From positions 124,001-188,000 of the forward strand of contig NIVC01001129.1 in NCBI GenBank assembly GCA_002269645.1: DNA of 64,000 bases, given 5' to 3'. Below the pieces are notes generated by a model, which was not told the DNA's origin, did no database searches, and was given only the letters and a program-made list of their open reading frames with translations. The DNA is from Macrostomum lignano. Taxonomy: Eukaryota. The translations under genes and the position numbers were made by a program. Every line of letters starts with the position of its first letter. Within the stretch, counting starts at the first letter, position 1. Shown in pieces: positions 991-61,995 of this stretch.

Positions 991-1398
991 TCGCACAGTA
1001 TCCATTCGGCATATCTTGCACTGAGCTCACCCCAGGTGACCCTCATATATTTCCACCTCAACTCCCCGACGCCCTATCGGAAACTGGACTCCGCATCAAA
1101 GGCGGATTCAATTACTTGATCCTTCAGCCGCTCAGGAGGCCAGAGTAATCCCGCAATGGACTCCCGCAATGAACTCTTGAAACCCAGGGGAATTGAGGGT
1201 GCACAGTGAGTGCCATCCAGGTAACAGGATACCCCTGGCCTAAAATGTTGCATAATTCAATAATTTAACAGATTTAACAGATAATCAATCAGATGATAAA
1301 CTGTGATAACATGTTCAAGACCATCACGCTTTGGTATAAATTTCTGAGTTTTCTAAGAAACAAATCAATAAAATCCAATGCCCCTGCAACAAATTCAG

Positions 1399-2042
1399 AG
1401 TGTCTGGATCTGCGTCAACTGCAGCAGGGACAGAGACAGCGGCAAGTGGCAGCGGGAGGAGCAGGAGCAGCAGCAACAACAACAGCAAAAGCAACAAGAG
1501 GAGGAGGAGAAGAAGAAAAGGCAACAGGAAGAGGCCGAGAGAAGCGCCGAAGAAGCAGAAGAGGAGACACGGGAGCAGAAGCAGGAGCAGCAGCAGGAGC
1601 AGGAGCAGACAAAAGAGGACACTGCTCCTAAAGAAGATTCGTCAGAAAAGCAAAAGCAACAACAACAGCAACAAAAACCAAAGCAAAAACCGGCCGGTCA
1701 GAACCCGCCGCTGAAGCAGCAACAACAGCAGCGACTGCCAACTGAATCTGTCGACAAGCCGCCCGTGAAGCAGCCGGCAAAGCAGCAGCCTAAACAGCAG
1801 CAGCAAAAGCAGCAACAGCAGCAACAACAGCAACAAAAGCAGCAGCAACAAAAGCAGCAGCAGCAGCAGCAAAAAAGTCAATCGAAAGATTCTTCGGCGC
1901 CTCCTAGACAGACATCGACAGCGTCCGAGCGCTCCGGAAAATCTGCCAGCGCTTCGCCGGTGACGCGAACTGCGCAGCCTGGTGGCGTCAGCGGCGCAGT
2001 CAGCGGCGGCAACCGGAGCGCGTCGCAAGACTCAGCACAGAG
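1399..2042 (+). CDS. RIMS/unc-10: RIM exon: end of Zn finger plus Q/E/K-rich low-complexity linker
   Basis: ttcag|AGT GTC TGG ATC TGC GTC AAC TGC (SVWICVNC); donor AG|gtgagc at 2043. Confidence 0.85.
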
Positions 2043-14000: not shown

Positions 14001-17000
14001 TCCAGCTACTGGGGTTAATGTCAACCAACTGTAGAATGAACTGATTTGATCAATCTAGTTACTGGGGGTAATGTCAACCAACTGTAGAATGAACTGATTT
14101 GATAAATCTAGCTACTGGGGGTAATGTCAACCAACTGTAGAATGAACTGATTTGATAAATCCAGCTACTGGGGTTAATGTCAACCAACTGTAGAATGAAC
14201 TGATTTGATAAATCCAGCTACTGGGGGTAATGCCAACCAACTGTAGAATGAACTGATTTGATAAATCCAGCTACTGGGGGTAATGCCAAACAACTGTAGA
14301 ATGAACTGATTTGATCAATCCAGCTACTGGGGGTAATGTCAACCAACTGTAGAATGAACTGATTTGATAAATCCAGCTACTGGGGGTAATGCCAACCAAC
14401 TGTAGAATGAACTGATTTGATCAATCCAGCTACTGGGGGTAATGTCAACCAACTGTAGAATGAACTGATTTGATCAATCCAGCTACTGGGGTTAATGCCA
14501 ACCAACTGTAGAATGAACTGATTTGATAAATCCAGCTACTGGGGGTAATGCCAACCAACTGTAGAATGAACTGATTTGATAAATCCAGCTACTGGGGGTA
14601 ATGCCAAACAACTGTAGAATGAACTGATTTGATCAATCCAGCTACTGGGGTTAATGCCAACCAACTGTAGAAAGAACTGATTTGATAAATCCAGCTACTG
14701 GGGGTAATGCCAACCAACTGTAGAAAGAACTGATTTGATAAATCCAGCTACTGGGGGTAATGCCAACCAACTGTAGAATGAACTGATTTGATAAATCCAG
14801 CTACTGGGGGTAATGTCAACCAACTGTAGAATGAACTGATTTGATAAATCCAGCTACTGGGGGTAATGCCAACCAACTGTAGAATGAACTGATTTGATCA
14901 ATCCAGCTACTGGGGGTAATGTCAACCAACTGTAGAATGAACTGATTTGATCAATCTAGCTACTGGGGGTAATGCCAACCAACTGTAGAATGAACTGATT
15001 TGATAAATCCAGCTACTGGGGGTAATGCCAATTAACTGTAGAATGAACTGATTTGATAAATCCAGCTACTGGGGGTAATGCCAACCAACTGTAGAATGAA
15101 CTGATTTGATAAATCCAGCTACTGGGGGTAATGTCAACCAACTGTAGAATGAACTGATTTGATCAATCCAGCTACTGGGGTTAATGTCAACCAACTGTAG
15201 AATGAACTGATTTGATCAATCTAGCTACTGGGGGTAATGCCAACCAACTGTAGAATGAACTGATTTGATAAATCCAGCTACTGGGGGTAATGCCAATTAA
15301 CTGTAGAATGAACTGATTTGATAAATCCAGCTACTGGGGGTAATGCCAACCAACTGTAGAATGAACTGATTTGATAAATCCAGCTACTGGGGGTAATGTC
15401 AACCAACTGTAGAATGAACTGATTTGATAAATCCAGCTACTGGGGGTAATGTCAACCAACTGTAGAATGAACTGATTTGATCAATCCAGCTACTGGGGGT
15501 AATGTCAACTGAGCCAACTCAAGGCTAAAGTAGGTCTTAACCAACTGTAGAATGAATTATATTAAGTCCACAATTATATTAAGTCCAAGCTTTGGCTGTC
15601 ACCTACGTCCCAGAGCGGCCTTAGTCAGTGTTGCTATTTATTAATGCTTATTTTGCGTCACCAATTAGTGAAGACCCCCCGCCGAGCAAGACTGGAGAGA
15701 CGAGAAGACAGAGATAAGATGAGCCCACAGCCTATTGACTCAGTTTACATTACACGCGAGCTGGCTTGTTGCCTTGCTCGCTCGCTACATCATCAAATTC
15801 TCAGAGGATTTGCGCATGCAGCCCCGCCCAGATTCCATAGCGGGAGGAGCTAATCAGGGAAATGAGAGACAGGGACACGGCCCACCTGAGCTGAATTATG
15901 ATTCTGCATCGCTACAACTGTTGGCGTGCTGCAGAAGCCGGAAAATGTTTCTTTTTACCTTAATCTGCGGGCCACTTGCCAGGATTCCTAGAGAATGGCT
16001 TGATTTAATTATTGTGCCATTGTATCTCACTTTAGACAATGTTGAATCTTCAACTTTTTCCTAGTAGAAATGCAATTAAACTTATGAGTGAGGGTAGTCA
16101 GAATGATTTGATAAAAAAATCTAAAAGCTTGTTGGGACGCTTTTGAACTCGAATTAGTAAATCAAGCCTCAACCTGACTTCACACTGATTTGATGGAGCA
16201 ATTACCTGACTTCACACTGATTTGATGGAGCAATTACCTGACTTCACACTGATTTGATGGAGCAATTACCTGACTTCACACACTGATTAGATGGAGCAAT
16301 TACCTGACTTCACACACTGATTAGATGGAGCAGTTACCTGACTTCACACACTGATTAGATGGAGCAATTACCTGACATCACGCACTGATTAGATGGAGAA
16401 ATTACCTGACATCACACACCTATTAGATGGAGCAATTACCTGACACCACACACTGATTAGATGGGGCAGTTACCTGACATCACACACTGATTTGATTGGA
16501 GCAATTACCTGAATTCACACGCTGCTGATAGAATGCAACCTGGCATCCTGATAATTAGATTGAAGGATAGGCTACTTTCCTGCAATTTTACTAATTAGAA
16601 ATGGGCCACTTAGCTGATTTCTGACTGAAAAAGAGCAAAATACCCCATCGAAAAACTCTGGTAGTTCAGAATTTTATAGTTCAGACCCAGAATCCCATTT
16701 CAATTACACGCCATCGCGTCCAACTGCAGGTCGCGGTCTACCCGAGCCGCCAACTTCAGGCCTTGGTCTCAGCGCAGGCGCGAACTCGGGACTATCGGCC
16801 TCCGCAGCCGACTTCGCCCACGGAGGCTACGGGAGCCCGGCCGGCCCAGTGAATGCTGCGAACGCCGCAATGCGAAAGCGACAGCTGCCGCAGTTGCCGA
16901 CAACGGCCAGGGCGGGCTCCGGGCACCTGGTCCGGCCACCTTTTGATCGCGTGTCGGTTGCCGCAGCGGCGGCGGCAGCAGCGTCGGAAGAGTCACCGCC

Positions 17001-19728
17001 GCTGGGCAGCTACCACCGGCCTTTCCAGAACCCGTCGGCGCCAGCAACGCTCAACCGGCTGATGATGCCGCACTCCGACGACGTCGAAATGGGCGCTACC
17101 AGCGACGTGTCGGAGAACTCCGACGCTTCGGAGTTGTCGAAGATGTCGGCCGTGTCGGCGCAGAGCGACCGTCGGCACAGGAAGAAATCGTCGACAGCCG
17201 GAGCTGGTGGCGGCGGCGGCGACGCTGGCGGGCCCGGCGGTGGAGGCGGCGGTGGTGGCGGCGGCGGCTCTCGCAACCGGAAAATCTCCTCAGGCGAGGG
17301 CGGCAACTCCAGCGACGGTGGCGGCGGAGGTCGCTCTGACAAGAGCCGTCGGGCCAGCATGGGCCAGAAGTTCAGCAACTTCATTCCGGGCCTGAGTCGG
17401 AAGACCTCGTCCGCGAATAATTTAGGTGAGATTGAGGTAGCTACAGGTCGGCTTGCAGTTACACAGCCCTCGGATGCACCGTTGGCACTGCATCTGACTC
17501 CCCAATTACCGAAGTTCCCGAAGGACCAATACTGAATGGTAAAAAGTTCTTTGCACCATATGTATGGGCGGCGATCCTATCCGCGTGACTTAGAGAAGAT
17601 TTAACGAATCTTATAACAGTATTAAACGTGAGAAGCAAGCGATTCAACAACTCTGTCCACTTAATTACAGAACGCAAGCAGCGCGGCACATTCCAACGCT
17701 CTGAGGAGGTGCTACCGCCGAGTCTGCAAGCTCCCGGCAGCTGCGCCAGGGATCCCATGAGCTCAAACAGGCCGGTGAGCTCAGGCCGAGGCCAGCAGCC
17801 GCAGCAGCAGCTGCTGCAACAGCACGCGACGGCGCAACAATTCCAAGCGCAAGACTCCAGCGACGGCAGTTTGCCAAGCGTCGATCCGCGCCTGTGAGCT
17901 CAAAATTTTGTGTACATGCCTAACGATAAATTAAGTTAGGGCCGCTGTACACTCCTGTGTGAGTGTGTGCCTGTGCGTATGACTGCGTACGTATCCGCGC
18001 GCTTGTGTGCCTGCTCAGGGGTTGTGTGACAATGTCGCCTAAAGTGTAAAATATCCCAATTTGGTACGTATTTCAACACTACGAGCGTAGATCGTCAGGA
18101 TCCGCGAACATGAAAACCCCAAGGCACAAGGCAAGGCATCTGTGCGTGCTCAGCGGAATGAGTTCGTGCCTGCGTACAGTACTCAGCAACTGGTTGTGAG
18201 ACGAATTAGTCGAAGGCGTTGCTTCAGGGTGCCCGCAGCCCTCCTTCGAATATTTATTAATGCATAGCGTTGCTTTTGAAACACTGCAGGCTGAGTGCCA
18301 GCGCGCCGCTGCAGGAGGGCCATCTAACGGAGTTTGTTGAAGGCCTGGGTCCCGGGCAGCTGGTTGGCCGTCAGGTGCTTGGTACGCCCAGCCTTGGCGA
18401 GATCCAACTGAGCCTGTTCAACCGGAAGGGCCGCCTAGAGGTTGAAGTCATTCGAGCGCGCGGTCTGTTCGCCAAGAAAGGCGCCAAAGAGTTGCCGGCG
18501 CCCTACGTCAAAGTCTACTTGCTCGAGGCCAAGACTTGCGTTGAAAAACAGAAGACAACTGTAACTAGGCGAACTCTGGATCCGCTCTACCAGCAGCAGT
18601 TGGTCTTCTTGGAGAACTATAAAGGCAAGACGCTACAGGTGAGCAGCTTTGGCGCCTCTGCTACTAGCGCCCCTCTCTAATGAAAAGTCACCACTTGATG
18701 AAATGACGGTCGAAAAATGAAATAGTGCCACCCAAAATGCATTGGCGCCAACTTTAATTGCATGGGCTGCCTCGCATAGAGATTCAGGGTTGCCACTTGG
18801 AGATTCAGGATTGCCACTTGGAGATTCAGGGTTGCCTCGCATAGAGATTCAGGGTTGCCTCGTATAGCGATTCAGGGTTGCCTCGCACAAAGATTGCCAC
18901 AGTGTTGCCTCGCATAGAGATTCAGTGTTGCCTCGCACAAAGATCAGAGTTGCCTAGCACAAAGATTCAGGGTTGCCTCGCATTGAGATTCAGGATTGCC
19001 TCGCATAGAGATTGTGTTGCCTCGCACAAAGATCAGAGTTGCCTAGCACAAAGATTCAGGGTTGCCTCGCATTGAGATTCAGGATTGCCTCGCATAGAGA
19101 TTCAGTGTTGCCTCGCACAAAGATCAGAGTTGCCTAGCACAAAGATTCAGGGTTGCCTCGCATTGAGATTCAGGATTGCCTCGCATAGAGATTCAGTGTT
19201 GCCTCGCACAAAGATCAGAGTTGCCTCGCACAAAGATTCAGGGTTGCCTCGCATTGAGATTCAAGATTGCCTCGGATAGATTCAGGGTCGCCACTCGGAG
19301 ATTCAGGGTTGCCACTTGAATATTCAGGTTTGCCACCTCAGAGATTCAGGGTTGCCGCTCAGAGATTCAGGGTTGCCGCTCAGAGATTCAGGGTTGCCAC
19401 TCGAAGATTCAAGGTCAGGGATCGCTAGAAATCCCTTGACAGGCCAAAGCAGAAGTTCTTTATTTATTACGTAAAAACGCTTGCAACAAAGCATTGAGAA
19501 ATGACCCACCAACAATGCGACACTCCTCAGGTAACAGTGTGGGGAGACTACGGTCGCATAGACAAGAAGGCATTTATGGGAGTGTGCCAGATCATGCTGG
19601 ACGAACTGGACCTGTCCAACATAGTGATCGGCTGGTACAAGCTCTACCCGACTTCCTCCCTGGTGCACCAGCATCACAGACGGTCGTCTTCTTCGTCGAT
19701 GGACGCGAGTTCACAAGTTCGCAGTTAA
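1399..19728 (+). CDS. RIMS/unc-10: RIM/UNC-10 (Rab3-interacting molecule) presynaptic scaffold, 5'-partial multi-exon gene; N-terminus lies upstream of the window
   Basis: Exons 1399-2042, 3197-3238, 3825-4513, 5570-5625, 6585-6684, 7675-7924, 8807-8850, 9441-9645, 11778-11940, 12073-12162, 13754-13805, 16730-17425, 17671-17893, 18290-18638, 19531-19728. All are GT-AG and phase-compatible, summing to 3801 nt = 1266 aa + stop. RIM hallmarks: WICVNC..SGKW (Zn-finger end), KNFLS-HPVTWQLSKDGSRLIGHMLL, PDZ GDLRVGDEVLEWNG, C2A, RQLPQLP, FQRSEEV, EGLGPGQLVGRQVLG, C2B VWGDYGRIDKKAFMG...VIGWYKLYP. Confidence 0.95.
2068..3085 (+). repeat. Intronic 25-30-bp minisatellite rich in AACCAATCAG and GTGAGT
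   Basis: Units such as ccaaccaatcagaagtgagt(acgcgt)agctcc; starts ~25 nt after the donor at 2043. Confidence 0.95.
3197..3238 (+). CDS. RIMS/unc-10: RIM candidate 42-nt symmetric micro-exon (SGYESASKSIDRLPR)
   Basis: ttttctgcttcag| ... AAG|gtaagc; phase 2/2 and open in the RIM frame. Confidence 0.7.
3535..3798 (+). repeat. 16-bp minisatellite (actgatgagtcagtag)
   Basis: Direct reading; ends ~25 nt before the acceptor at 3824. Confidence 0.95.
3825..4513 (+). CDS. RIMS/unc-10: RIM exon: S/P/Q-rich and acidic linker
   Basis: tttgcag| acceptor; same frame as ORF 3889-4542; donor G|gtaagg at 4514. Confidence 0.85.
4595..5350 (+). repeat. 33-bp minisatellite, ~22 near-perfect copies, each with AATAAA
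   Basis: Unit aataaagacctcgattgagtcaaggacttctag; ORF 4643-5419 is its translation. Confidence 0.97.
5570..5625 (+). CDS. RIMS/unc-10: RIM exon (EADRRNPEAIDAKVKNFLS)
   Basis: ttgcag| and TCA|gtgagt; joins in frame to HPVTW. Confidence 0.85.
5920..6575 (+). repeat. 28-bp minisatellite (taatccactcaataatcctgttgcactt)
   Basis: ~23 copies ending ~10 nt before the acceptor at 6584. Confidence 0.97.
6585..6684 (+). CDS. RIMS/unc-10: RIM exon: PDZ N-terminal part
   Basis: HPVTWQLSKDGSRLIGHMLLKK; cccgcag| and G|gtgagt. Confidence 0.93.
7038..7620 (+). repeat. Purine-only 9-bp repeat (gggagagaa/gaaagagaa)
   Basis: Direct reading. Confidence 0.95.
7675..7924 (+). CDS. RIMS/unc-10: RIM exon: PDZ domain core
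   Basis: GLRVLGG...AYIVRVRPDSVADRVGDLRVGDEVLEWNG...VELIVQR. Confidence 0.93.
7940..8662 (+). repeat. (TTCTA/TTCTG)n pentamer array
   Basis: Direct reading; starts just after the donor at 7925. Confidence 0.95.
8807..8850 (+). CDS. RIMS/unc-10: RIM 44-nt linker exon
   Basis: ttttag| and A|gtgagt; supplies the phase 2 to phase 1 shift needed between the PDZ and C2A exons. Confidence 0.8.
8960..9428 (+). repeat. 28-bp minisatellite (ctcactaatcactcgattcactcaaacc)
   Basis: Ends ~12 nt before the acceptor at 9440; unit contains branch-point-like CTAAT. Confidence 0.95.
9441..9645 (+). CDS. RIMS/unc-10: RIM exon: C2A first half
   Basis: GRIQLRLWYDADSAQLTVSLL; donor GA|gtaagc. Confidence 0.9.
9690..10075 (+). 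repeat. 12-bp repeat (gagttcatgagt)
   Basis: Direct reading; decays at the 3' end. Confidence 0.93.
10822..11672 (+). repeat. 23-bp minisatellite (ctgatctaccctagacactgatt)
   Basis: ~37 copies. Confidence 0.97.
11778..11940 (+). CDS. RIMS/unc-10: RIM exon: C2A middle
   Basis: DKRRSKTV...EPSWNQLFTF...LQLEVMDY...LIGE|gtaagg. Confidence 0.92.
12073..12162 (+). CDS. RIMS/unc-10: RIM exon: C2A end
   Basis: TVIPLSSCDLNDSPVWYEL; cttcag| and CTG|gtgagt. Confidence 0.9.
13754..13805 (+). CDS. RIMS/unc-10: RIM 52-nt exon beginning with ATG (MSHPDRHNDFYRSVPLRG)
   Basis: ctgtttcag|ATG ... AGA G|gtgagt; its phase 0 to phase 1 shift links the flanking exons. Confidence 0.75.
13915..15560 (+). repeat. 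53-bp minisatellite (aaccaactgtagaatgaactgatttgataaatccagctactgggggtaatgcc)
   Basis: ~31 copies with few variant positions. Confidence 0.97.
16170..16520 (+). repeat. 32-34-bp minisatellite (cctgacttcacactgatttgatggagcaatta)
   Basis: Direct reading. Confidence 0.93.
16730..17425 (+). CDS. RIMS/unc-10: RIM exon: RQLPQLP (RIM-BP SH3-binding motif), Ser-rich segment and poly-Gly
   Basis: RKRQLPQLP; SDVSENSDASELSKMSAVSAQSDR; SMGQKFSNFIPGLSRKTSSANNL; donor G|gtgaga. Confidence 0.92.
17671..17893 (+). CDS. RIMS/unc-10: RIM exon (FQRSEEV...SSDGSLPS)
   Basis: ttacag| and CT|gtgagc. Confidence 0.9.
17913..18050 (+). mobile_element. Truncated copy of the SINE-like body (RIM intron)
   Basis: catgcctaacgata...gttagggccgctgtacactcctgtgtgagtgtg...tatgactgcgtacgtatcc, near-identical to 49274-49440. 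Confidence 0.8.
18290..18638 (+). CDS. RIMS/unc-10: RIM exon: C2B first part
   Basis: FVEGLGPGQLVGRQVLGTPSLGEIQL...LEVEVIRARGL...PAPYVKVYLL...TLDPLYQQQLVF. Confidence 0.96.
18765..19410 (+). repeat. ~21-23-bp degenerate minisatellite (gattcagggttgcctcgcataga family) with nested larger duplications
   Basis: Direct reading. Confidence 0.9.
19531..19728 (+). CDS. RIMS/unc-10: RIM terminal exon: C2B end and stop
   Basis: VTVWGDYGRIDKKAFMGVCQIMLDELDLSNIVIGWYKLYPTSSLV; stop TAA 19726-19728; ATTAAA at 19741. Confidence 0.96.
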   Translation, partial: VTVWGDYGRIDKKAFMGVCQIMLDELDLSNIVIGWYKLYPTSSLVHQHHRRSSSSSMDASSQVRS

Positions 19729-20291: not shown

Positions 20292-20941
20292 CAGTGGCGT
20301 AGCCAGAGGGGGGTGTGGCCGGGGGGCCGCGGCCCCCCCCCCCCCCCAATCGCCTGGGGGTGGGGTTGGGCGCGGCGGATACCAAAAACCAGGAGGCAAT
20401 TGAGTGCCTGCGGCGCCAAAATGAGTGCCTGCGGCGCAAAAATGAGCGCCTGCGGCGCCAAAATGAGTGCCTGCCGCGCCAAAATGAGTGCCTGCCGCGC
20501 CAAAATGAGTGCCTGTGGCGCCAAAATAAGTGCCTGCGGCGCCAAAATGAGTGCCTGCGGCGCCAAAATGAGTGCCTGCGGCGCCAAAATGAGTGCCTGC
20601 GGCGCCAAAATGAGTGCCTGCGGCGCCAAAATGAGTGCCTGCGGCGCCAAAATGAGTGCCTGCGGCGCCAAAATGAGTGCCTGCGGCGCCAAAATGAGTG
20701 CCTGCGGCGCCAAAATGAGTGCCTGCGGCGCCAAAATGAGTGCCTGCGGCGCCAAAATGAGTGCCTGCGGCGCCAAAATGAGTGCCTGCGGCGCCAAAAT
20801 GAGTGCCTGAGGCGCTAAAATGAGTGCCTGCGGCGCTAAAATGAGTGCCTGCGGCGCCAAAAGTGGCAATGGCATAAAGCATGGCCAGCTGCCAGGCCAA
20901 CCCGCCCCCCCCCCCGATTGAAATTTCTGGCTACGCCACTG
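20292..20941. mobile_element. hAT-like MITE carrying a 21-bp tandem array
   Basis: Perfect 15-bp TIR CAGTGGCGTAGCCAG / CTGGCTACGCCACTG; flanks ttgctaac vs ttgctgtg (partial 8-bp TSD); internal (gagtgcctgcggcgccaaaat) ~22x. Confidence 0.8.
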
Positions 20942-22907: not shown

Positions 22908-25900
22908 TCAAGCAGCCAAATCCGGCCCCGACGCCGACGACCGCAACGGCTGCAGCAGCTCGCCAGTCAGCCGCAGACTGTCCGCCGACGTCAACTGATT
23001 GCAGGCTAACGGTCGAGCATTGTTAGCAAAGAAGATGCTGGGCGGCGTTTCGCCACCAGAGGAGAAGCAGGGACAGGAACTGGTGCCGTCCACTAGGGTC
23101 AGGAAGTAGCGCCGTCGGGTGCAGTCCGACTCGGCCAGCTGCTCGCCGATGGTGAAAAATTCGACACCGTTGTAGAAACTGAATCGAGACTGTCGCAGCT
23201 GCTCGACACTGAATGGCTCAGAAGCGTCCAGGTACATCGGCTGCGGGTGTTTATTATTTTAATTCTCATAGGGACTTTTCCTTTGTAAGTTGATCAGGTA
23301 ACATGAATTAGACAAACTGCACTGTTTAATTATTTTCATTAAAGTTTTGAGGTTTCGGATATGTTTAGGAAAACAGATTGGTCGCTAGATTGGTAGATTT
23401 CAATACCGTACGAGGTGTGTTTAAAAAGTAACGAGAGTTTTGTTAAACTTTTGACTGAATAAACTTATAAAATTTACAACAGACAACTTTTTTATCCTTA
23501 TCCAACTGCAAGAAACTGTGTTATTATAATAAAAGTCAATACTCGTATGAATCAGGAAGAACTCCTACCTGAAACCACTCCCATCCCATTGGCACGAAAG
23601 CGCCCTCGGTGTTGTTCGCGGCACTCTTGGAAAATGGTCCTTTGAAGCGCAGAGCGGCCAAAACTCGACCATTTGCGTCGAACAGCTCCAGCTTGATTGC
23701 TCGATAGCTGTCGAGTTTAAGACCGGATAGCAGCGAGCTCTTGTAGTGCCTGGCCAGCTGGCTCAGATCGTCCACGTCGGCTAGCAGAGCGGCTGGCGTG
23801 AACCGGCTGGTGAGCAGCAGCGAGTGTAGATAGCCCGCCCCCGCTTTGACAAACAGCAGCACTTCCGTTAGCTGCTCGTCCCCGGTTGTTCCGTGTGTTG
23901 GCTGCGGTCGGTCTGCCGGTAGACGACTCGTGGTGAGGCGCAACTCAAACACTTGCTCGGACAGGGTGCCGCCGAACGGGCTCGGGGACACGTACACCTG
24001 GGGGAAAGTTACGGCCTCCGGGTAGCAACGATGCGGCGCTGTCAAGACTATGAAAACACCGACGAGATCGGAGCAACTGCCGGTAGCGCGGTAGCGTTCG
24101 AGGCTGCCAAAAACCAGCAGAAACTCCGAGCCAACCTGCGGTCGGAACTGATCTAAACTGGCGCGGTAGATGGAGTTCACATAGGAGGTCACCCAAGGAA
24201 AAGCGTCCGTGACGCGAGATCGCGCGAACACGCTGCTGAGTTCTGACCGGCTGGTGTCCATGGTCAAGTGACCAATCTCGGCTCCCTTCGAGTCTAGAAA
24301 CTGCCAAGTAATGCTTCTAAAGTAGCCGATATTGTGCAGTTTGTGCAAGAACTCGCTTTTATACACGGATTTGGTTGAGTCTAGACCTTCGAAAGCCGGA
24401 GTCTTGCTGAAACTAGAGTCCTCGCGGCTGAACAGCGATTCGAATTCGGCTCCCGAACCGCAGCGAATGGCAAACAGGACTGTTCTACCGTAGCGCAGGT
24501 GCGACTGGCATTGAGCCAGCTTGTTGGACATCTCATTCAGGTGAACGCTGCCTCCGTGCTTCACTGAAGCGAGTATAGTGCTCTCCTGCGTGAGGCTGGT
24601 CAGCTGATTCTGCCGGCTGACGTAGACGGCCTCCTGTCGGGAGAGTCGACTGCTCAGCTGAGCAGAAATATTCGCAAATCTGGATATCGACTCGGTCACG
24701 CTTCGAAGTTCGTTGCGATAGGCGGCGATGCGTGCCTCCAGAGCTGCCAGACTGTCTTCCTGTGCTTTGCGCACCGATGCTTTGCTATCGAGACGGGTCT
24801 GTTTGAATTCGTAAGTTGAAATTGAAATAAAACTAAAATACTATAAGAGCATTTTTCTTACAGATGTTTGAAAACCTGAATTTCCTGCGAGTTCTGCGTA
24901 GATAAGACTACATATAAAGCACAAGATGAAATCAGGAACACGAGTTTCAATTAGCTACTTATTAAGTAGTTACTAATGCAGTTTTACTTAAAGATTGCAG
25001 AACCTAGAATACATTTGATTACAGACTACTTTTGAAACCAGAGCTTATTCTAGCGGACTTCCCTCTAGAATAAGCTTTATTGAGGAGTTTCATAAATCAT
25101 CTTGTTCGAGTAAAATTGTGAATGACAAAGATGTTTGCTATGAATCTGTTTTTTTATCTAAAAGTAAAAAAAGCGCACAACAAAATAAAGTTTTCACAAA
25201 GATAGCAGACACTCCCCCTAAAATAGCAAGCATCCCCCAGTAGCAAGCATCCCCCAGACAGCAACACATCCCCCAGGTAGCAAGCATCCCCCAGATAGCA
25301 AGCATCCCCCAGATAGCAAGCATCCCCCAGACAGCAACACATCCCCCAGATAGCAAGCATCCCCCAGACAGCAACACATCCCCCAGATAGCAAGCATCCC
25401 TAAATAGCAAGCATCCCCCAGATAGCAAGCATCCCCCAGATAGCAAGCATCCCCCAGATAGCAAGCATCCCTAAATAGCAAGCATCCCCCAGATAGCAAG
25501 CATCCCCCAGATAGCAAGCATCCCCCAGATAGCAAGCATCCCTAAATAGCAAGCATCCCCCAGATAGCAAGCATCCCCCAGATAGCAAGCATCCCCCAGA
25601 TAGCAAGCATCCCTAAATAGCAAGCATCCCCCAGATAGCAAGCATCCCCCAGATAGCAAGCATCCCCCAGATAGCAAGCATCCCTAAATAGCAAGCATCC
25701 CCCAGATAGCAAGCATCCCCCAGATAGCAAGCATCCCTAAATAGCAAGCATCCCCTTCCTCCGAGAGCACGCAACCCCAGAAAAGCGTTCGAAAAATCGC
25801 ACCTGGAAGTCGGCCTTCAAGCGTTCCTCCTCCACGCCTAGCCCAGCCAGTTTAGTCTTCTCCGTAGCCAGCGACTGGCTCTGATCGAACGTCTCTCTCT

Positions 25901-26966
25901 GGAGCTTCGCCAGTCTGGTCATCATCTCCCCGGCGTAGGCTTCGATGCTCGCTCCAGCGAAGCCGCTGCCGTTCGTTTCAGTACGGATGCTGTCCCTCAG
26001 AGTGACGATGCGTCGCAGCAGACCATTGTCCTTCGCGTTGCAGGTCTGTTCAATGTCAGCTTCCAGGCCAGCTACAGATTGCTTGACACTTCGGGCGTAG
26101 TCTAACAGCGAACTCTCCTGTTTGTGATAGGAGGCGAAGTTGCCAATCAAGTAGTTGACGTACTGCACTAGGGTAGCGATCACTTTGTTCGCACCAGCCT
26201 CTTGCTGTTCGTAGTTGTAACAGGCGGCTGTGCAGCGCATGTTGAGAAGGCTGTATAGCGTTGACTGATAGTCCGGATAGGCAGTTGGGTCAAACACCAG
26301 CCCAGCGTCGCTTGCTATTTTCTGCAGCACATTGTCGTTCGATTTTTGCAAGCCCAGCGCAATCGCAGCTGTCACTCGACGGTGCAACTGAGCCAGAAGG
26401 TCGAGCAAGTACACGCCAAAGCTACCCGAGTGCATCCCGTCCGTCAAGAAGATGACTATGCGTTTGCGCGTTTCCGCTGAGGCCGTTTCGTTTCCCGACA
26501 CAGCCAGATCGGCTTGTCTTCGGCTCAGCTCCGCGATGCAGCCCTCAACAGCGGCGTCGATAGCCGTGTAGCCACCATCGTACGTGAGGCGAGAGACGGC
26601 CCCAAGGAGGTCCAGCTTGCTGGAATACTTGCCAATGGGTATGGTCTGGGTCACATGAGAGCTGAACACTAGCACTCCAACTTGAATGAAATTTTCGCCA
26701 ATTTCCAGTCGACTTATAGTGTCAAATACGACGCTCTTAACAACCAGGTGGAAGTCGTTTAGGCTGACAGATTCCGAGCCATCGATGGCGAATAGCAAGT
26801 CGGCGCGAGCGTTAGACGAGCAGGCCTTGCTATCGACGTCGTGAAGCCACTTCTCCAGCGGCATGTACTTTGCCGCGGTTTCGTCGTAAACAACAGGGCC
26901 GGACGTGTCCACGGCACTGGCGGGAACTAGGAGACCAACGGCCAGACAGAGAAGCCACAGACGCAT
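22908..26966 (-). CDS. Secreted VWA + coiled-coil + tandem unknown-domain protein (~908 aa, 3 exons)
   Basis: Exons 26966-25803, 24798-23569 and 23240-22908, with phase-0 GT-AG joins FQ|TRL and FQ|PMY. Signal peptide MRLWLLCLAVGLLVPASA. VWA with DGSES/T/TDG MIDAS. ~250 aa heptad-rich region. Two similar C-terminal blocks (VLFAIRCGSG...YKSEFL...ITWQFLDSKG vs VLLFVKAGAG...YKSSLL...IKLELFDANG). Confidence 0.88.
23409..23440. mobile_element. Solo mariner-like terminal sequence
   Basis: TA|CGAGGTGTGTTTAAAAAGTAA resembles mariner TIR starts; no partner TIR seen. Confidence 0.35.
25200..25756 (-). repeat. 17/18-bp minisatellite (atagcaagcatcccccag on +) with a 71-bp higher-order period
   Basis: In intron 1 of the VWA gene, just after the donor; repeat-derived ORFs start 71 bp apart (25400, 25471, 25542). 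Confidence 0.93.
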
Positions 26967-27448
26967 AATGTTCTCTCTGCCTTAATTGTATTGATGTTTT
27001 TAGCCAACAATTGTAAGTGTGAAACGTTTTTCAAGAATTGGTTTGGTTTGTTTCAGCTACCGACTCCAAACTGATTCAAACTTTATCGCTGTGTTGACAA
27101 AGCAACTTGTACAGAGCGAAAGCTTATCACCCCGTAAGCCAATCAGTGCGCAGTAAGTTGAAATTGATGCCAATATAGCTATCAGATAGTTTCAATAAAT
27201 CAATTCAAAGGCTTTTGATCCAAGGTAGTGCGGCCCCGAAAGTACGTGTTCTACTGTACACTGATGAGTCATACCAACCCCTGCCCAGACAACTGATTTT
27301 ACAACCCCCCCCCCCTACGTCTCGTAACCAGCAGCCTCCCCTAGCCAACCAAACAGTAGCAGCCAGTGAGGCTCTTTGCGTCGCTTATCATTTCCAATAA
27401 TTTCTAATAAATGTGTGTTGCATTGTGTACTTTTTCGCATTTCATATA

Positions 27449-27857
27449 CACTCAGCAACAGCTAAACCCCCCCCAAACTCACGCTGTCACACGGCCCAAA
27501 AGTTTTGTATGCCATCGGTGACTCGGAAGCAGCTCGGCATTCGCACATTGAACTGGCCGTCAAAGTCTCCAGACATGAACCCCATCGAGCATGTCTGGGA
27601 CTTTGTAAAGCGAAGAGTTCAGCAGGATGCCCCACAGAATGCTGAACAGTTGCGACTGGCGGTGCTGAATGCCTGGCAGCAGCTGCCCCAAGAGTTCATC
27701 AACCGGCTGGTGATCAGGATGCCACGACGAGTCACGGCACTTTTGCATGCTCGTGGTTCCTACACACGATACTGAGACTAGAATTAAAGACATTGCTTAA
27801 CTTTTGTGCCCGTGTGACAGCGTGAGTTGGGGGGGGGGGTTTAGCTGTTGCTGAGTA
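27449..27857 (+). mobile_element. Internally deleted Tc1-family element (~409 bp) keeping the transposase C-terminus
   Basis: ~55-bp TIRs (CACTCAGCAACAGCTAAACCCCCCC...CAAAAGTT / inverse), TA on both sides; WPSKSPDMNPIEHVW...RGSYTRY* (DDE_3 C-terminal motif). Confidence 0.92.
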
Positions 27858-28301: not shown

Positions 28302-31300
28302 TCAGCCAAGCTTGACAAGCTTCCAAAACCTAGCGCCATCCTGGTTCATGACGCCGCCAAACAAGCTCTCCGGAATGCTATCGGACTGAAAAAGCCAACA
28401 GTTTCCATTCGGCAGCAACTTTGAGTACAGCACAGATCGACAGGTGCGCTGGCTCAGGCACAGATGACCACATTCAATATCGGAGCCGACCGACAAAGGC
28501 TGATTAGCCAAAGTCGAAGCAGATGGGCTTGGCAGCGAGAGCGTCATGACAGATCGAGCCGGGGAAGAAAAATCCATACGGTCTGGAGTTACTGCAGAAG
28601 AGAGAGTTTACGTTATCGAATGTATTCAATACATTTGGAAGTTGCAGATACTCGATAGCATGCATGTACCTCCTATGATGTCGATTTCGCAGAAATGCAG
28701 CGACCAAAGTCCTGAAGACAAATCGTTGGTATTCTTGTACACAGCCAGATACCGGCCGGGCGTGATCCTCGAGCAGGTGAAGTTGATCGGGTTGTCAGTG
28801 GACTTGGGCTCGCCAGTCCAGCGCATACAGAGCTGAAAAAAGCCGATATCAAATTCGGACCACACAGAAGCGTTGTTCGATATTCCTGCAAAATTTATTC
28901 AACTTTAGTCAGAGAAATAAATGTTAATTCAGAATTCGACTGGGTAATCAGTGTGACCAGTGTTATCCAGTGTGACCAGTGTTATCCAGTGTGACCAGTG
29001 TTATCCAGTGTGACCAGTGTTATCCAGTGTGACCAGTGTTATCCAGTGTGACCAGTGTTATCCAGTGTGACCAGTGTTATCCAGTGTGACCAGTGTTATT
29101 CAGTGTGACCAGTGTTATCCAGTGTGACCAGTGTTATCCAGTGTGACCAGTGTTATCCAGTGTGACCAGTGTTATCCAGTGTGACCAGTGTTATCCAGTG
29201 TGACCAGTGTTATCCAGTGTGACCAGTGTTATCCAGTGTGACCAGTGTTATCCAGTGTGACCAGTGTTATCCAGTGTGACCAGTGTTATCCAGTGTGACC
29301 AGTGTTATCCAGTGTGACCAGTGTTATCCAGTGTGACCAGTGTTATCCAGTGTGACCAGTGTTATCCAGTGTGACCAGTGTTATCCAGTGTGACCAGTGT
29401 TATCCAGTGTGACCAGTGTTATCCAGTGTGAGCAGTGTTATCCAGTGTGACCAGGGTGATTCAGCGTGACCAGGGTGACTCAGTGTGACCAGGGTGATTC
29501 AGTGTGACCAAGCTGATTTAGTGTGACCAGAGTGATTCAGTGTGACCAGGATTATTCAGTGTGACCAGGGTGATTCAGTGTGATCAGAGTGATCCAGTGT
29601 TACCAGGGTGATTCAGTGTGACCAGGGTGATTCAGTGTGACCATGATTATTCAGTGTGACCAGGGTGATCCAGTGTGACCAGGGTGATTCAGTGTGACCA
29701 AGCTGATTTAGTGTGACCAGAGTGATTCAGCGTGACCAGGGTGACTCAGTATGACCAGAGTGATTCAGTGTGACCAGAGTGATTCAGCGTGACCAAGCTG
29801 ATTTAGTGTGACCAGAGTGATTCAGCGTGACCAGGGTGACTCAGTATGACCAGGGTGACTCAGTATGACCAGAGTGATTCAGTGTGACCAGGGTGACTCA
29901 GTATGACCAGAGTGATTCAGTGTGACCAGAGTGATTCAGTGTGACCAGAGTGATTCAGTGTGACCAGGGTGATTCAATATGACCAGGGTGATTCAATATG
30001 ACCAGTGTGCTTCACATTCAGTTGATTACACCAATCTCACCTATGCTCACTTGAGTAAACTTCTCCGAACCGTAGTCGATTCGATTCCAGACTCTAGCAC
30101 CGACAACCATAAATTCGTCCTTCATGTCAACCAGCCACCAGGGTCCCCGATCACTATTAGACGATTCGACGCATCTTTCTCCATATTTTATCACGCCATC
30201 GCGATTGCCATCGTTTCCAAAGATTGGCAAATTTTTAGCGTCAATTGTTGAAGACATTTTGGCCGACAGGTTTTTTGGGACAATGAATTGTTCCGCTCGT
30301 CCTAAAAATTAGGGCATTGTTTTAGATATTTTATTCAGTGTGACTTGGCGTGTGTAATTGTATCTTAGTGTGTCTCGTTATCTCTGTTTGTCTTCATGTG
30401 TCTGGTGTATCTGTTTGTCTTCGGTTGTCTCGGTGTGTCTGTTTGTCTTCGTGTGTCTCGGTGTGTCTGTTTGTCTTCGTGTGTCTGATGTGTCTGTTTG
30501 TCTTCGTGTGTCTCGGTGTGTCTGTTTCTCTTCGTGTGTCTGATGTGTCTGTTTGTCTTCGTGTGTCTCGGTGTGTCTGTTTCTCTTCGTGTGTCTGATG
30601 TGTCTGTTTGTCTTCGTGTGTCTCGGTGTGCCTGTTTGTCTTCGTGTGCCTGATGTGTCTGTTTGTCTTCGTGTGTCTCGGTGTGTCTGTTTATCTTCGT
30701 GTGTCTCGGTGTGCCTGTTTGTCTTCGTGTGCCTGATGTGTCTGTTTGTCTTCGTGTGTCTCGGTGTGTCTGTTTATCTTCGTGTGTCTCGGTGTGTCTG
30801 TTTGTCTTCGTGTGTCTGATGTGTCTGTTTTTCCTCGTGTGTCTCGGTGTGTCTGTTTATCTTCGCGTGTCTGATGTGTCTGTTTGTCTTCGTGTGTCTC
30901 GGTGTGTCTGTTTTTCCTCGTGTGTCTCGGTGTGTCTGTGTGTCTTCGTGTGTCTCGGTGTGTCTGTTTGTCTTCGTGTGTCTGATGTGTCTGTTTTTCC
31001 TCGTGTGTCTCGGTGTGTCTGTTTATCTTCGCGTGTCTGATGTGTCTGTTTGTCTTCGTGTGTCTCGGTGTGTATGTTTATCTTCGTGTGTCTGATGTGT
31101 CTGTTTTTCCTCGTGTGTCTCGGTGTGTCTGTTTGTTTTCGTGTGTCTGATGTGTCTGTTTGTCTTCGTGTGTCTCGGTGTGTCTGTTTGTCTTCGTGTG
31201 TCTCGTTGTCTCTGTTTGTCTTCGTGTGTCTCGGTGTGCATGTTTGTATTCGTGTGTCTGATGTGTCTGTTTGTCTTCGTGTGTCTGATGTGTCTGTTTG

Positions 31301-34300
31301 TCTTCGTGTGCCTGATGTGTCTGTTTGTCTTCGTGTGTCTGATGTGTCTGTTTGTCTTCGTGTGTCTCGATGTGTCTGTTTGTCTTCGTGTGTCTCGGTG
31401 TGTCTGTTTGTCTCCGTGTGTCTGATGTCTCTGTTTGTCTTCGGTTGTCTCGGTGTGTCTGTTTGTCTTCGTGTGTCTGATGTGTCTGTTTGTCTTCGTG
31501 TGTCTGATGTGTTTGTTTTTCCTCGTGTGTCTCGGTGTGTCTGTTTGTCTTCGTGTGTCTTGATGTGTCTGTTTGTCTTAGTGTGTCTGATGTCTCTGTT
31601 TGTCTTCGTGTGTCTCGGTGTGTCTGTTTGTCTTCGTGTGTCTGATGTGTCTGTTTGTCTTAGTGTGTCTGATGTCTCTGTTTGTCTTCGTGTGTCTCGG
31701 TGTGTCTGTTTGTCTTCGTGTGTCTCGGTGTGTATGTTTATCTTCGTGTGTCTGATGTGTCTGTTTGTCTTCGTGTAAATGTTTGCCTTGGTATGTCTGA
31801 ATTTGTCTGGTTGTCTCGGTGTGTCTGGATGTGTCTGGTTGTCCTAATGTGTCTTGTTGTCTTGGTATGTCTGTTTGTGTCTGGTTGTCTCTATGTGTCT
31901 GGTTGTCTCTATGTGTCTGGTTGTCTCTATGTGCCTGGTTGTCTCTATGTGTCTGGTTGTCTCTATGTGTCTGGTTGTCTTCGGTTGTCTCGGTGTGTCT
32001 GTTTGTCTTCGTGTGTCTGATGTGTTTGTTTGTCTTCGTGTGTCTCGGTGTGTCTGTTTGTCTTCGTGTGTCTCGATGTGTCTGTTTGTCTTCGTGTGTC
32101 TCGGTGTGTCTGTTTGTCTTCGTGTGTCTGATTTGTCTGTTTGTCTTCGTGTGTCTCGGTGTGTCTGATTGTCTTCGTGTGTCTGATGTGTCTGTTTGTC
32201 TTCGTGTGTCTCGGTGTGTCTGTTTGTCTTCGTGTGTCTCGGTGTGTCTGTTTGTCTTCGTGTGTCTGATGTGTCTGTTTGTCTTCGTGTGTCTCGATGT
32301 GTCTGTTTGTCTTCGTGTGTCTCGGTGTGCCTGTTTGTCTTCGTGTGTCTCGGTGTGTCTGTTTGTCTTCGTGTGTCTGATGTGTCTGTTTGTCTTCGTG
32401 TGTCTGATGTGTCTGTTTGTCTTCGTGTGTCTCGATGTGTCTGTTTGTCTTCGTGTGTCTGATGTGTCTTTTTGTCTTCGTGTGTCTGATGTGTCTGTTT
32501 GTCTTCGTGTGTCTAATGTCTCTGTTTGTCTTCGTGTGTCTCGGTGTGTCTGTTTATCTTCGTGTGTCTCGGTGTGTATGTTTGTCTTCGTGTGTCTGAT
32601 GTGTCTGTTTGTCTTCGGTTGTCTCGGTGTGTCTGTTTGTCTTCGTGTGTCTGATTTGTCTGTTTGTCTTCGTGTGTCTCGGTGTGTCTGTTTGTCTTCG
32701 TGTGTCTCGGTGTGTCTGTTTATCTTCGTGTGTCTCGGTGTGCCTGTTTGTCTTCGTGTGCCTGATGTGTCTGTTTGTCTTCGTGTGTCTCGGTGTGTCT
32801 GTTTATCTTCGTGTGTCTCGGTGTGTCTGTTTGTCTTCGTGTGTCTGATGTGTCTGTTTTTCCTCGTGTGTCTCGGTGTGTCTGTTTATCTTCGCGTGTC
32901 TGATGTGTCTGTTTGTCTTCGTGTGTCTCGGTGTGTCTGTTTTTCCTCGTGTGTCTCGGTGTGTCTGTGTGTCTTCGTGTGTCTCGGTGTGTCTGTTTGT
33001 CTTCGTGTGTCTGATGTGTCTGTTTTTCCTCGTGTGTCTCGGTGTGTCTGTTTATCTTCGCGTGTCTGATGTGTCTGTTTGTCTTCGTGTGTCTCGGTGT
33101 GTATGTTTATCTTCGTGTGTCTGATGTGTCTGTTTTTCCTCGTGTGTCTCGGTGTGTCTGTTTGTTTTCGTGTGTCTGATGTGTCTGTTTGTCTTCGTGT
33201 GTCTCGGTGTGTCTGTTTGTCTTCGTGTGTCTCGTTGTCTCTGTTTGTCTTCGTGTGTCTCGGTGTGCATGTTTGTATTCGTGTGTCTGATGTGTCTGTT
33301 TGTCTTCGTGTGTCTGATGTGTCTGTTTGTCTTCGTGTGCCTGATGTGTCTGTTTGTCTTCGTGTGTCTGATGTGTCTGTTTGTCTTCGTGTGTCTCGAT
33401 GTGTCTGTTTGTCTTCGTGTGTCTCGGTGTGTCTGTTTGTCTCCGTGTGTCTGATGTCTCTGTTTGTCTTCGGTTGTCTCGGTGTGTCTGTTTGTCTTCG
33501 TGTGTCTGATGTGTCTGTTTGTCTTCGTGTGTCTGATGTGTTTGTTTTTCCTCGTGTGTCTCGGTGTGTCTGTTTGTCTTCGTGTGTCTGATGTGTCTTT
33601 TTGTCTTCGTGTGTCTCGGTGTGTCTGTTTGTCTTCGTGTGTCTCGGTGTGTCTGTTTATCTTCGTGTGTCTCGATGTGTCTGTTTGTCTTCGTGTGTCT
33701 TGATGTGTCTGTTTGTCTTAGTGTGTCTGATGTCTCTGTTTGTCTTCGTGTGTCTCGGTGTGTCTGTTTGTCTTCGTGTGTCTGATGTGTCTGTTTGTCT
33801 TAGTGTGTCTGATGTCTCTGTTTGTCTTCGTGTGTCTCGGTGTGTCTGTTTGTCTTCGTGTGTCTCGGTGTGTATGTTTATCTTCGTGTGTCTGATGTGT
33901 CTGTTTGTCTTCGTGTAAATGTTTGCCTTGGTATGTCTGAATTTGTCTGGTTGTCTCGGTGTGTCTGGATGTGTCTGGTTGTCCTAATGTGTCTTGTTGT
34001 CTTGGTATGTCTGTTTGTGTCTGGTTGTCTCTATGTGTCTGGTTGTCTCTATGTGTCTGGTTGTCTCTATGTGCCTGGTTGTCTCTATGTGTCTGGTTGT
34101 CTCTATGTGTCTGGTTGTCTTCGGTTGTCTCGGTGTGTCTGTTTGTCTTCGTGTGTCTGATGTGTTTGTTTGTCTTCGTGTGTCTCGGTGTGTCTGTTTG
34201 TCTTCGTGTGTCTGATGTGTCTGTTTGTCTTCGTGTGTCTCGGTGTGTCTGTTTTTCCTCGTGTGTCTCGGTGTGTCTGTGTGTCTTCGTGTGTCTCGGT

Positions 34301-52900: not shown

Positions 52901-53045
52901 CCAATATACTAAAATTGGTCTGTCGGTAGGTAGGTAGGTGTGTATCTATCTAGGTATGTGATCGATTTTAGCAAATTATCTGCTATTGTTCTATTAACAT
53001 GATTTATGCGATCACTAATTCTTAATCACTAAAACATTTGACTAA

Positions 53046-61897: not shown

Positions 61898-61995
61898 AGG
61901 GTTTAAAGCGGCCTGAATTTCTAATCGTCAGGCATGTACACTCTCTGTGCCTTGGCGGTTGGCCCTCGTGGCTGTGAATCGCACGACAATCCGCC

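What the first reader, a model, noticed from the sequence alone, without database searches (positions are those of the whole stretch)
22908..26966. Unusual secreted protein: VWA - long coiled coil - two tandem unnamed ~200-aa domains
Seen: a clean 3-exon ~908-aa ORF with a signal peptide and a VWA whose MIDAS is complete (DGSES, T, TDG). About 250 aa of coiled-coil-like sequence follows, bracketed by Cys, then an internal duplication sharing L.F....G.G, YKS..L, a hydrophobic strand ending F/L-D-x-x-G, Cys pairs and P-x-(V/I)-(Y/F). Known: VWA plus coiled coil gives oligomeric matrix proteins (matrilins), and stalk-plus-head layouts typify collectins and ficolins. Inference: an oligomeric, collagen-free 'stalk and double head' recognition or adhesive protein. 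I do not recognise this architecture from a named family.
Basis: partly seen in the sequence, partly recalled or inferred. Interest (0 to 1): 0.72.

Follow-up and report, generated by a model that had tools for sequence, protein, structure and literature searches.

The report
Flatworm secreted VWA–coiled-coil–double-domain protein
This is a real, expressed gene of the flatworm Macrostomum lignano for a secreted protein with a metal-binding VWA domain, a long helical stalk and two copies of a domain that matches nothing known; it is a lineage-restricted matrix or secretion protein of untested function.

Summary
On the minus strand, three GT-AG, phase-0 exons (26966-25803, 24798-23569, 23240-22908) encode a 908-aa protein. 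It is identical to GenBank PAA71170.1 / PAA71888.1 (Macrostomum lignano, BOX15_Mlig024859, "hypothetical protein").

- **Splicing and translation:** an RNA-seq-based annotation and an intronless 57%-identical transcript from another sample support the splicing. Seven exact tryptic peptides in a published M. lignano "footprint" proteome show the protein is made.
- **Architecture:** signal peptide; VWA (Pfam 81 bits) with a full MIDAS motif; about 210 aa of segmented heptad-repeat helix; two tandem ~190-aa homologous domains. The duplication scores z up to 9.35 against shuffles.
- **C-terminal pair:** no match in Pfam, in PDB sequences, or in an exhaustive HMMER scan of 1.84 billion representative proteins. 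AlphaFold failed on it (pLDDT 33), so its fold is unknown.
- **Selection:** all modules are under purifying selection (dN/dS about 0.1-0.2).

The most likely reading, which is inferred, is a disulfide-stabilised parallel oligomer that bridges extracellular ligands. VWA heads would sit at one end and the new domains at the other, in matrix, mucus or adhesive secretion. It belongs to no named family. It is a new variant of the VWA/coiled-coil matrix-protein theme and is of moderate interest.

The parts
22908..26966 (-). Whole gene from ATG to stop (3 exons, 2 introns). It is Macrostomum lignano BOX15_Mlig024859 (PAA71170.1 / PAA71888.1), on contig NIVC01001129.1 of assembly GCA_002269645.1.
25803..26966 (-). 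Exon 1 (aa 1-388), with donor CAG|GTGCGA.
26910..26966 (-). Signal peptide, aa 1-19 (MRLWLLCLAVGLLVPASAV).
   Evidence: It is the only hydrophobic 19-mer, and the orthologue also starts with a signal-like segment.
26280..26801 (-). VWA domain, aa 56-229. The DGSES of the MIDAS motif is at 26769-26783. T134 and D176 complete the motif.
25803..26219 (-). Helical heptad-repeat region, first part (aa 250-388). It includes C309 at a heptad 'd' position.
24799..25802 (-). Intron 1 (1004 nt, phase 0). It contains an 18-bp minisatellite at 25223-25755 with about 30 copies.
23569..24798 (-). Exon 2 (aa 389-798), with acceptor AAACAG|ACC and donor CAG|GTAGGA.
24511..24798 (-). Helical heptad-repeat region, second part (aa 389-484). 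This is the core of the confident AlphaFold helix (aa 341-468).
23926..24483 (-). C-terminal repeat A (aa 494-679). It is an unnamed domain with a conserved C630...C646 pair.
   Evidence: There is no Pfam or PDB match.
23569..23862 (-). C-terminal repeat B, first part (aa 701-798).
23241..23568 (-). Intron 2 (328 nt, phase 0, 31% GC). It splits repeat B.
22908..23240 (-). Exon 3 (aa 799-908 plus stop). The second part of repeat B (aa 799-890) is at 22965-23240, followed by an 18-aa poorly conserved tail.

Best explanation
SHOWN. [quoted passage not shown] It encodes a ~98-kDa secreted protein with no membrane anchor. The protein consists of a signal peptide, one VWA domain with a complete metal-ion-dependent adhesion site (MIDAS), a ~210-residue segmented heptad-repeat alpha-helical region, and two tandem homologous ~190-residue Cys-containing domains. 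Those two domains belong to no described family. All modules evolve under purifying selection.

INFERRED mechanism. The helical region forms a parallel, in-register coiled coil. Conserved cysteines may lock it covalently: C309 sits at a core 'd' position, and C249 and C485 lie at the two ends. This would cluster several VWA heads at one end and several pairs of the new domains at the other. The VWA would bind an acidic residue of a matrix ligand through its divalent cation. Its nearest solved relatives are collagen VI alpha3 N-domains and the collagen-binding mussel byssus protein PTMP1. The C-terminal pair would bind a second, unknown partner. The molecule would then work as a multivalent extracellular cross-linker in matrix, mucus or secreted adhesive material.
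For: - Gene model. It is identical to a public RNA-seq-derived model (method in PMC5730564).
- Orthologous intronless transcript: 57% identity, 97% coverage, contiguous across both junctions.
- Protein detected by mass spectrometry: 7 unique high-confidence tryptic peptides, all exact matches. They come from exon 1 and exon 2 and include repeats A and B. They are in sheet 'footprints_Trypsin_intact_2' of Dataset S2 of Wunderer et al. 2019, PMC6410801.
- VWA and MIDAS.
- No other hydrophobic segment.
- Heptad periodicity: hydrophobic a/d positions are conserved in both orthologues and C309 is at a 'd' position. AlphaFold predicts the region as all helix, with a 128-residue helix at pLDDT 70-89.
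- Internal duplication.
- All 13 mature-chain Cys are conserved. An odd number leaves at least one unpaired within a chain.
- dN/dS of 0.10-0.20 in each module, with dS saturated.
- Collagen binding by PTMP1: PMC4754843.
Against: - Oligomeric state, disulfide pattern and ligands are untested.
- The helical region has breaks (309-316, 330-340, 374-378) and three register shifts. Its first 90 residues have low AlphaFold confidence, so part of it could be a folded-back bundle.
- The fold of the C-terminal domains is unknown (pLDDT 33).
- The footprint sample also contains ribosomal proteins, PEPCK, arginine kinase and an ApoB-like protein. Presence there does not show an adhesive role.
- The protein was seen in one of the stored sheets only, and the stored files are truncated.
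- The site of expression is unknown.
Confidence: 0.45

Rival explanations
1. The protein is a monomeric matrix or secretion protein. On this reading the 'stalk' is a folded-back helical bundle domain between the VWA and the C-terminal domains. There would then be no multivalency and no stalk-and-head geometry.
For: - The helical region has Gly/Asn-rich breaks and three register shifts.
- AlphaFold gives low confidence for residues 230-340 and a pTM of only 0.26.
- There are weak sub-threshold hits to unrelated helical families, all below cut-off.
Against: - A single 128-residue uninterrupted helix is predicted with pLDDT 70-89. It cannot be buried in a monomer.
- a/d hydrophobic residues are conserved for about 210 residues.
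- A conserved Cys sits at a core 'd' position.
- The number of conserved Cys is odd.
Confidence: 0.2
2. The protein is a lineage-specific gland product with a reproductive or egg-related role, for example from cement or shell gland, prostate or antrum. It would reach 'footprint' samples as general deposited material rather than as part of matrix or adhesive.
For: - The family is restricted to M. lignano plus one other sample, as is typical of taxon-restricted secretory genes.
- The top protein of the footprint sheets is a lipoprotein/vitellogenin-like protein, so egg or body material is present in that sample.
Against: - dN/dS of 0.1-0.2 in all modules is not the rapid evolution reported for many Macrostomum reproduction-related genes (title and abstract of PMC7336406).
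- The gene ID is absent from the held supplements of four M. lignano expression papers, including that one. This is weak evidence because the files are truncated and ID formats differ.
Confidence: 0.2
3. The protein is a soluble pattern-recognition molecule that works like collectins or ficolins. The C-terminal double domain would act as a lectin head on an oligomerising stalk.
For: - The layout of a helical stalk followed by C-terminal globular domains.
- The neighbouring gene fragment encodes a PAN-like module that one old gene model fused to this gene.
Against: - No collagen Gly-X-Y repeats are visible in the sequence.
- There is no hit to any Pfam family, including lectin and fibrinogen-C families, in the C-terminal domains at E<=10.
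- The N-terminus carries a VWA rather than a short Cys-rich tail.
- No immune-related expression data exist.
Confidence: 0.1
4. The gene model is an artefact: three unrelated ORFs joined by chance splice sites.
Against: - The sequence is identical to an RNA-seq-guided public model.
- The orthologous transcript is collinear across both junctions.
- Peptides from exons 1 and 2 are grouped in one MS protein entry from a 3731-nt transcript.
- Purifying selection acts on all parts.
Confidence: 0.01

Closest known systems
Mussel proximal thread matrix protein 1 (PTMP1; PDB 4cn8) and the N-terminal VWA domains of collagen VI alpha3 (PDB 9han)
   Same: These are the best solved-structure sequence matches of the VWA domain (E=1.1e-17 and 9.8e-55 summed over many domains). 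The DxSxS / T / D MIDAS positions and the N- and C-terminal clamp cysteines align. Both are secreted matrix proteins.
   Different: PTMP1 is just two VWA domains, and collagen VI has many VWA domains plus a collagen helix. Neither has a heptad-repeat stalk or anything resembling the C-terminal pair. Per-domain scores are only about 30-39 bits.
Matrilins (cartilage matrix protein family)
   Same: They combine VWA with a coiled coil to make multivalent, disulfide-linked matrix adaptors. This is the working principle proposed here.
   Different: Matrilins have EGF repeats and a short C-terminal coiled coil, with nothing after it. Here there is no EGF. The helical region is central and about 210 aa long, and about 400 aa of novel domains follow it.
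Fibrinogen / angiopoietin-type proteins (Fib_alpha coiled coil plus C-terminal globular FReD)
   Same: A long Cys-flanked coiled coil leads to C-terminal globular domains. There is a weak Fib_alpha hit over residues 286-389 (E=0.012, 16.2 bits).
   Different: The hit is below Pfam's cut-off of 29.9 bits. There is no fibrinogen C-terminal domain. These proteins have no N-terminal VWA.
Collectins and ficolins
   Same: An oligomerising stalk carries C-terminal globular domains.
   Different: Here there is no collagen stalk and no C-type lectin or FReD head. The opposite end carries a large VWA head.
Macrostomum lignano adhesive proteins Mlig-ap1 and Mlig-ap2 (Wunderer et al. 2019, PMC6410801)
   Same: Same species. 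All are secreted, and all were detected in the same footprint mass-spectrometry dataset.
   Different: [quoted passage not shown] The present protein is not mentioned in that paper's text. I made no sequence comparison with them.

Membership tests
VWA domain superfamily (Pfam PF00092) | Sequence match to the VWA profile above the curated threshold | tested here: met
   81 bits against a cut-off of 23.8, E=1.6e-22, residues 56-229. PDB VWA domains are matched.
VWA domain superfamily (Pfam PF00092) | Complete MIDAS: DxSxS, then T, then D | tested here: met
   D62-G-S64-E-S66, T134 and D176. All are invariant in the orthologue and align to the corresponding PTMP1 positions. Metal binding itself was not tested.
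Matrilins | EGF-like repeats between or after the VWA domains | tested here: not met
   No EGF hit in Pfam at E<=1.
Matrilins | A short coiled coil as the C-terminal end of the protein | tested here: not met
   The helical region is central (aa 250-468) and is followed by about 420 more residues.
Fibrinogen-related proteins / angiopoietin-like | C-terminal fibrinogen globular domain | tested here: not met
   No Pfam family of any kind hits the C-terminal domains of either orthologue at E<=10.
Fibrinogen-related proteins / angiopoietin-like | Fib_alpha coiled-coil profile above threshold | tested here: not met
   16.2 bits against a cut-off of 29.9.
Collectins / ficolins | Collagen-like Gly-X-Y stalk | tested here: not met
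   No Gly-X-Y run in the 908-aa sequence and no collagen hit.
Collectins / ficolins | C-type lectin or FReD recognition head | tested here: not met
   No Pfam hit in residues 482-908.
Olfactomedin family (coiled coil plus OLF domain) | C-terminal olfactomedin domain | tested here: not met
   No Pfam hit in residues 482-908 at E<=10, and no PDB sequence hit.
Any structurally known fold for the C-terminal repeat (for example a LamG/ConA-like jelly roll, which is only a lead from memory) | Confident structural model matching a known fold | tested here: inconclusive
   The AlphaFold model from a 2-sequence alignment has mean pLDDT 33 and no residue at or above 50, so no fold search on it was justified.
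Parallel disulfide-linked coiled-coil oligomers | Heptad a/d hydrophobic core over many heptads | tested here: met
   Four register-consistent segments with conserved hydrophobic a/d residues in both orthologues. This is my own heuristic scoring, not a calibrated predictor.
Parallel disulfide-linked coiled-coil oligomers | Demonstrated oligomeric state | not testable with these tools
   This needs a multimer prediction with a deep alignment, or biochemistry.

The most novel reading that the evidence does not exclude
The duplicated C-terminal module is a new extracellular binding fold confined to macrostomid flatworms. On this reading the protein is an overlooked structural component of the material these worms deposit on surfaces (temporary-adhesive footprint or mucus), where it cross-links that material through its VWA and double-domain ends.
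Probability: 0.15. Interest if true: 0.6.

Novelty: new variant of a known kind. Interest (0 to 1): 0.4.

Why it matters
M. lignano is the main flatworm model for temporary bioadhesion, regeneration and transgenesis. A conserved, translated, secreted protein with an intact MIDAS VWA, a long oligomerising helix and an undescribed duplicated domain is a concrete candidate for the extracellular matrix or secretion toolkit of this animal. It also defines a domain family that current libraries (Pfam, PDB) do not cover.

The practical value is modest. It gives a target for in situ hybridisation, RNAi and transgenic tagging in a tractable species, and a candidate for a new domain entry. It does not overturn any concept, since VWA plus coiled coil is a well-known way to build multivalent matrix proteins.

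Tried and rejected
- **Word-indexed search, C-terminal 427 aa.** It returned nothing, not even P0001 or P0005, which contain that sequence and were found with the full-length query. I treat as a tool false negative and rely.
- **Exact look-ups.** The exon-1 ORF found nothing.
- **AlphaFold on the C-terminal pair.** A 2-sequence alignment gave pLDDT 33, which is unusable, so I ran no fold search on it.
- **Foldseek of the helical-region model against PDB.** All hits had E>1 and were generic long helices, which is uninformative.
- **PDB profile searches.** The C-terminal alignment and the 4-sequence single-domain profile gave only chance hits: aspartate-semialdehyde dehydrogenase at E=0.93 and a DUF4292 protein at E=0.66.
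- **Pfam at E<=10 on each repeat of both orthologues.** Nothing found.
- **Profile search with the 2-sequence full-length alignment.** No further relatives.
- **JGI metagenome scan with the C-terminal alignment.** 285 pattern matches, none confirmed.
- **Rfam and tRNA scans of the window, for taxonomic clues.** Nothing found.
- **Literature.** 'Mlig024859', 'SRR30276812' and 'Macrostomum + COL12A1' gave no papers. The gene ID is absent from the held supplements of PMC7336406, PMC5816591, PMC5946080 and PMC12896417.
- **C245-x-x-x-C249 as a fibrinogen-type disulfide ring.** I considered this and downgraded it, because C245 aligns with the VWA clamp Cys of PTMP1.
- **The 1820-aa UniRef model (P0004).** This old chimeric prediction fuses the upstream PAN-like fragment, this gene and repeat-derived junk. 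An in-frame TAA lies 18 nt upstream of the ATG in this window, so I rejected it as the true N-terminus.
Full report
**Gene model.** The finding lies on the minus strand. Reading the sequence and splicing it in a script gives three exons: 26966-25803 (388 codons), 24798-23569 (410 codons) and 23240-22908 (110 codons plus stop). Both introns are GT-AG and phase 0. Exons are GC-rich (55-60%) and introns AT-richer (44% and 31%).

An exhaustive HMMER scan returned a 908-aa public protein that is 100% identical over the query. A cluster look-up names it: Macrostomum lignano hypothetical protein BOX15_Mlig024859g2/g3 (PAA71170.1, PAA71888.1; UniRef A0A267FBL1, 'VWFA domain-containing protein'). A third copy, g1 (PAA90640.1), differs by one residue. 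The window is contig NIVC01001129.1 of assembly GCA_002269645.1. That assembly's gene set was built from genome-guided RNA-seq assemblies with experimentally defined transcript ends (PMC5730564).

**Independent support for splicing and translation.** The only other relative in 5.8 billion clustered proteins is P0005. It is 930 aa, 57% identical and covers 97% of the query. It is encoded without introns on a 2998-nt Logan contig from run SRR30276812, so that contig is a transcript. Its ORF is collinear across both exon junctions.

Searching the supplementary mass-spectrometry tables of Wunderer et al. 2019 (PMC6410801) with tryptic peptides of the protein found one protein entry. It is described as a 3731-nt transcript with a Pfam VWA hit and best human hit COL12A1. 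It has seven unique high-confidence peptides, all exact matches: ETFDQSQSLATEK (358-370, exon 1), KAQEDSLAALEAR (399-411), QNQLTSLTQESTILASVK (451-468), TPAFEGLDSTK (521-531), SITWQFLDSK (550-559), SELSSVFAR (573-581) and FTPAALLADVDDLSQLAR (721-738).

The entry is in sheet 'footprints_Trypsin_intact_2' of Dataset S2, the analysis of material left on the substrate by attached worms. So the protein is made, including both novel repeats. The same sheet lists ribosomal proteins, PEPCK, arginine kinase and an ApoB-like protein. Its presence there therefore does not show an adhesive role.

**Modules.**
- *Signal peptide.* Residues 1-19 are the only strongly hydrophobic stretch. There is no transmembrane or GPI-like segment.
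- *VWA.* Residues 56-229 match Pfam VWA at 81 bits against a cut-off of 23.8. The nearest solved relatives are collagen VI alpha3 N-domains and mussel PTMP1, followed by VWF and integrin alpha1 I domains. The MIDAS residues D62, S64, S66, T134 and D176 are all present, invariant in the orthologue, and aligned with PTMP1's corresponding residues. In the same alignment C49 and C245 align with PTMP1's flanking cysteines. This suggests the usual VWA N-to-C clamp disulfide.
- *Helical region.* My heptad scoring finds four register-consistent segments: 250-305, 306-340, 341-389 and 390-462. The register is the same, and the a/d residues are hydrophobic and conserved, in both orthologues. C309 sits at a 'd' position. 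AlphaFold on residues 230-504 (2-sequence alignment, mean pLDDT 60) predicts the region as all helix, with one uninterrupted helix at 341-468 at pLDDT 70-89. The first 110 residues are of low confidence. Pfam gives only sub-threshold coiled-coil hits (Fib_alpha 16.2 bits against 29.9). So 'coiled-coil-like' is supported, but as a segmented ~210-aa region, and the oligomeric state is not established.
- *C-terminal repeats.* Within M. lignano alone the duplication is weak (BLASTP E=0.014). With the orthologue it becomes clear. hhalign of repeat A against repeat B profiles gives E=0.0028 over 147 collinear columns. Smith-Waterman scores against 1000 shuffles give z=9.35 (0/1000) for A(lignano) versus B(orthologue) and z=5.4 for A versus B within the orthologue. 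The alignments span from the first strand (VLFAIRCGSG / LLFVKAGAG) to the last (ELRLT / SLRLT).

**Uniqueness of the C-terminal pair.** No Pfam family hits it at E<=10 in either orthologue. No PDB sequence hits it with either profile. In the exhaustive scan of 1.84 billion representatives nothing hits it except its own 50% cluster. A JGI metagenome scan found nothing. AlphaFold on it failed (pLDDT 33), so the fold is unknown. I make no claim about it beyond being a mixed, probably beta-rich, disulfide-containing extracellular domain.

**Selection.** A codon alignment of the window CDS with the orthologous transcript gives pS of about 0.70 (saturated) and pN of about 0.28. dN/dS is 0.10 for the VWA, 0.20 for the helical region, 0.16 for repeat A and 0.20 for repeat B. 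Amino-acid identity is 57-63% in the VWA, the first helical part and both repeats. It is 44% in the second helical part and lower in the signal peptide and tail. All 13 cysteines of the mature chain are conserved. All modules are therefore functional and constrained.

**Mechanism (inferred).** A parallel in-register coiled coil would place several MIDAS VWA heads at one end and several repeat pairs at the other. An odd number of conserved cysteines and a core-position Cys make interchain disulfides plausible. This is the design of multivalent matrix adaptors such as matrilins and, in geometry, of fibrinogen-like rods. I therefore favour a multivalent extracellular cross-linker (confidence 0.45).

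Its site of action could be basement membrane or parenchymal matrix, mucus, adhesive footprint, or a reproductive gland product. That cannot be decided here.

**Rivals.**
- A monomeric protein with a helical bundle (0.2).
- A reproductive or gland-specific secretion (0.2). This is about where the protein acts, so it can hold together with either structural reading.
- A collectin-like recognition molecule (0.1).
- A gene-model artefact, which the evidence excludes.

**Comparison with known families.** It is a bona fide VWA protein. It fails the defining features of these families:
- Matrilins: no EGF, and the coil is not C-terminal.
- Fibrinogen/angiopoietin-like proteins: no FReD, and Fib_alpha is below threshold.
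- Collectins/ficolins: no collagen stalk and no lectin head.
- Olfactomedins: no OLF domain.

It works like a VWA/coiled-coil adaptor but is not a member of any of these. The sequence itself is already public, unnamed and unremarked, and appears in a published proteomics table. What is new is the recognition of the architecture and of the duplicated domain family.

**Verdict.** This is a new variant of a known kind, with interest about 0.4.

Noticed in passing
window 25223-25755 (intron 1); L003 11212-11394: An 18-bp minisatellite (ATAGCAAGCATCCCCCAG on the + strand) has about 30 copies here and about 10 in the other genomic copy of the gene (NIVC01001182.1). This accounts for the 357-bp difference in gene length (4059 against 3702 bp).
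   Followed up: partly
window 28329-28826 (-), and 57917-59276 (+): A small gene fragment lies upstream of the target. It encodes a Cys-containing module with sub-threshold PAN-domain hits (PAN_4 23.5 bits against a cut-off of 27). It is annotated as a 90-aa product in GenBank. The old 1820-aa UniRef model A0A1I8I9X3 fused it to the target gene. A diverged paralogous copy lies about 30 kb away on the other strand.
   Followed up: partly
window 27413-27775 (+): Remnant of a Tc1/mariner-type transposase (Pfam DDE_3, 34 bits) sits in the presumed promoter region of the target gene.
   Followed up: partly
window about 1-19728 (+); C2 domain at 18270-18680: The convergent downstream neighbour is a RIM (Rab3-interacting molecule) homologue of about 1398 aa, with RIM2a zinc finger, PDZ and C2 domains.
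   Followed up: partly
window 30363-39355: A 9-kb satellite block with a basic unit of about 28 bp (higher-order periods 55 and 83; about 325 copies). It has extreme strand asymmetry, with AT skew about -0.88 and GC skew about +0.28.
   Followed up: partly
window 20401-20862 and 28948-29995: Two more tandem arrays flank the gene: a 21-bp unit with 22 copies and a 19-bp unit with 55 copies. ORF listings show many further simple arrays across the window (for example 603-1061, 4643-5419, 6951-8728, 53029-54601, 61934-62523).
   Followed up: no
tool behaviour: The word-indexed protein search with the C-terminal 427 aa, typed as letters, returned no hit. The full-length query then retrieved two proteins that contain that segment at 100% and 58% identity. 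Negative results from that index should not be read as absence.
   Followed up: yes
L001 (Logan SRR30276812 contig, 2998 nt): The only orthologue comes from an unidentified sample. Synonymous sites are saturated against M. lignano (pS 0.70), so it is a distant species, presumably another macrostomid. The species could not be determined with the tools.
   Followed up: partly
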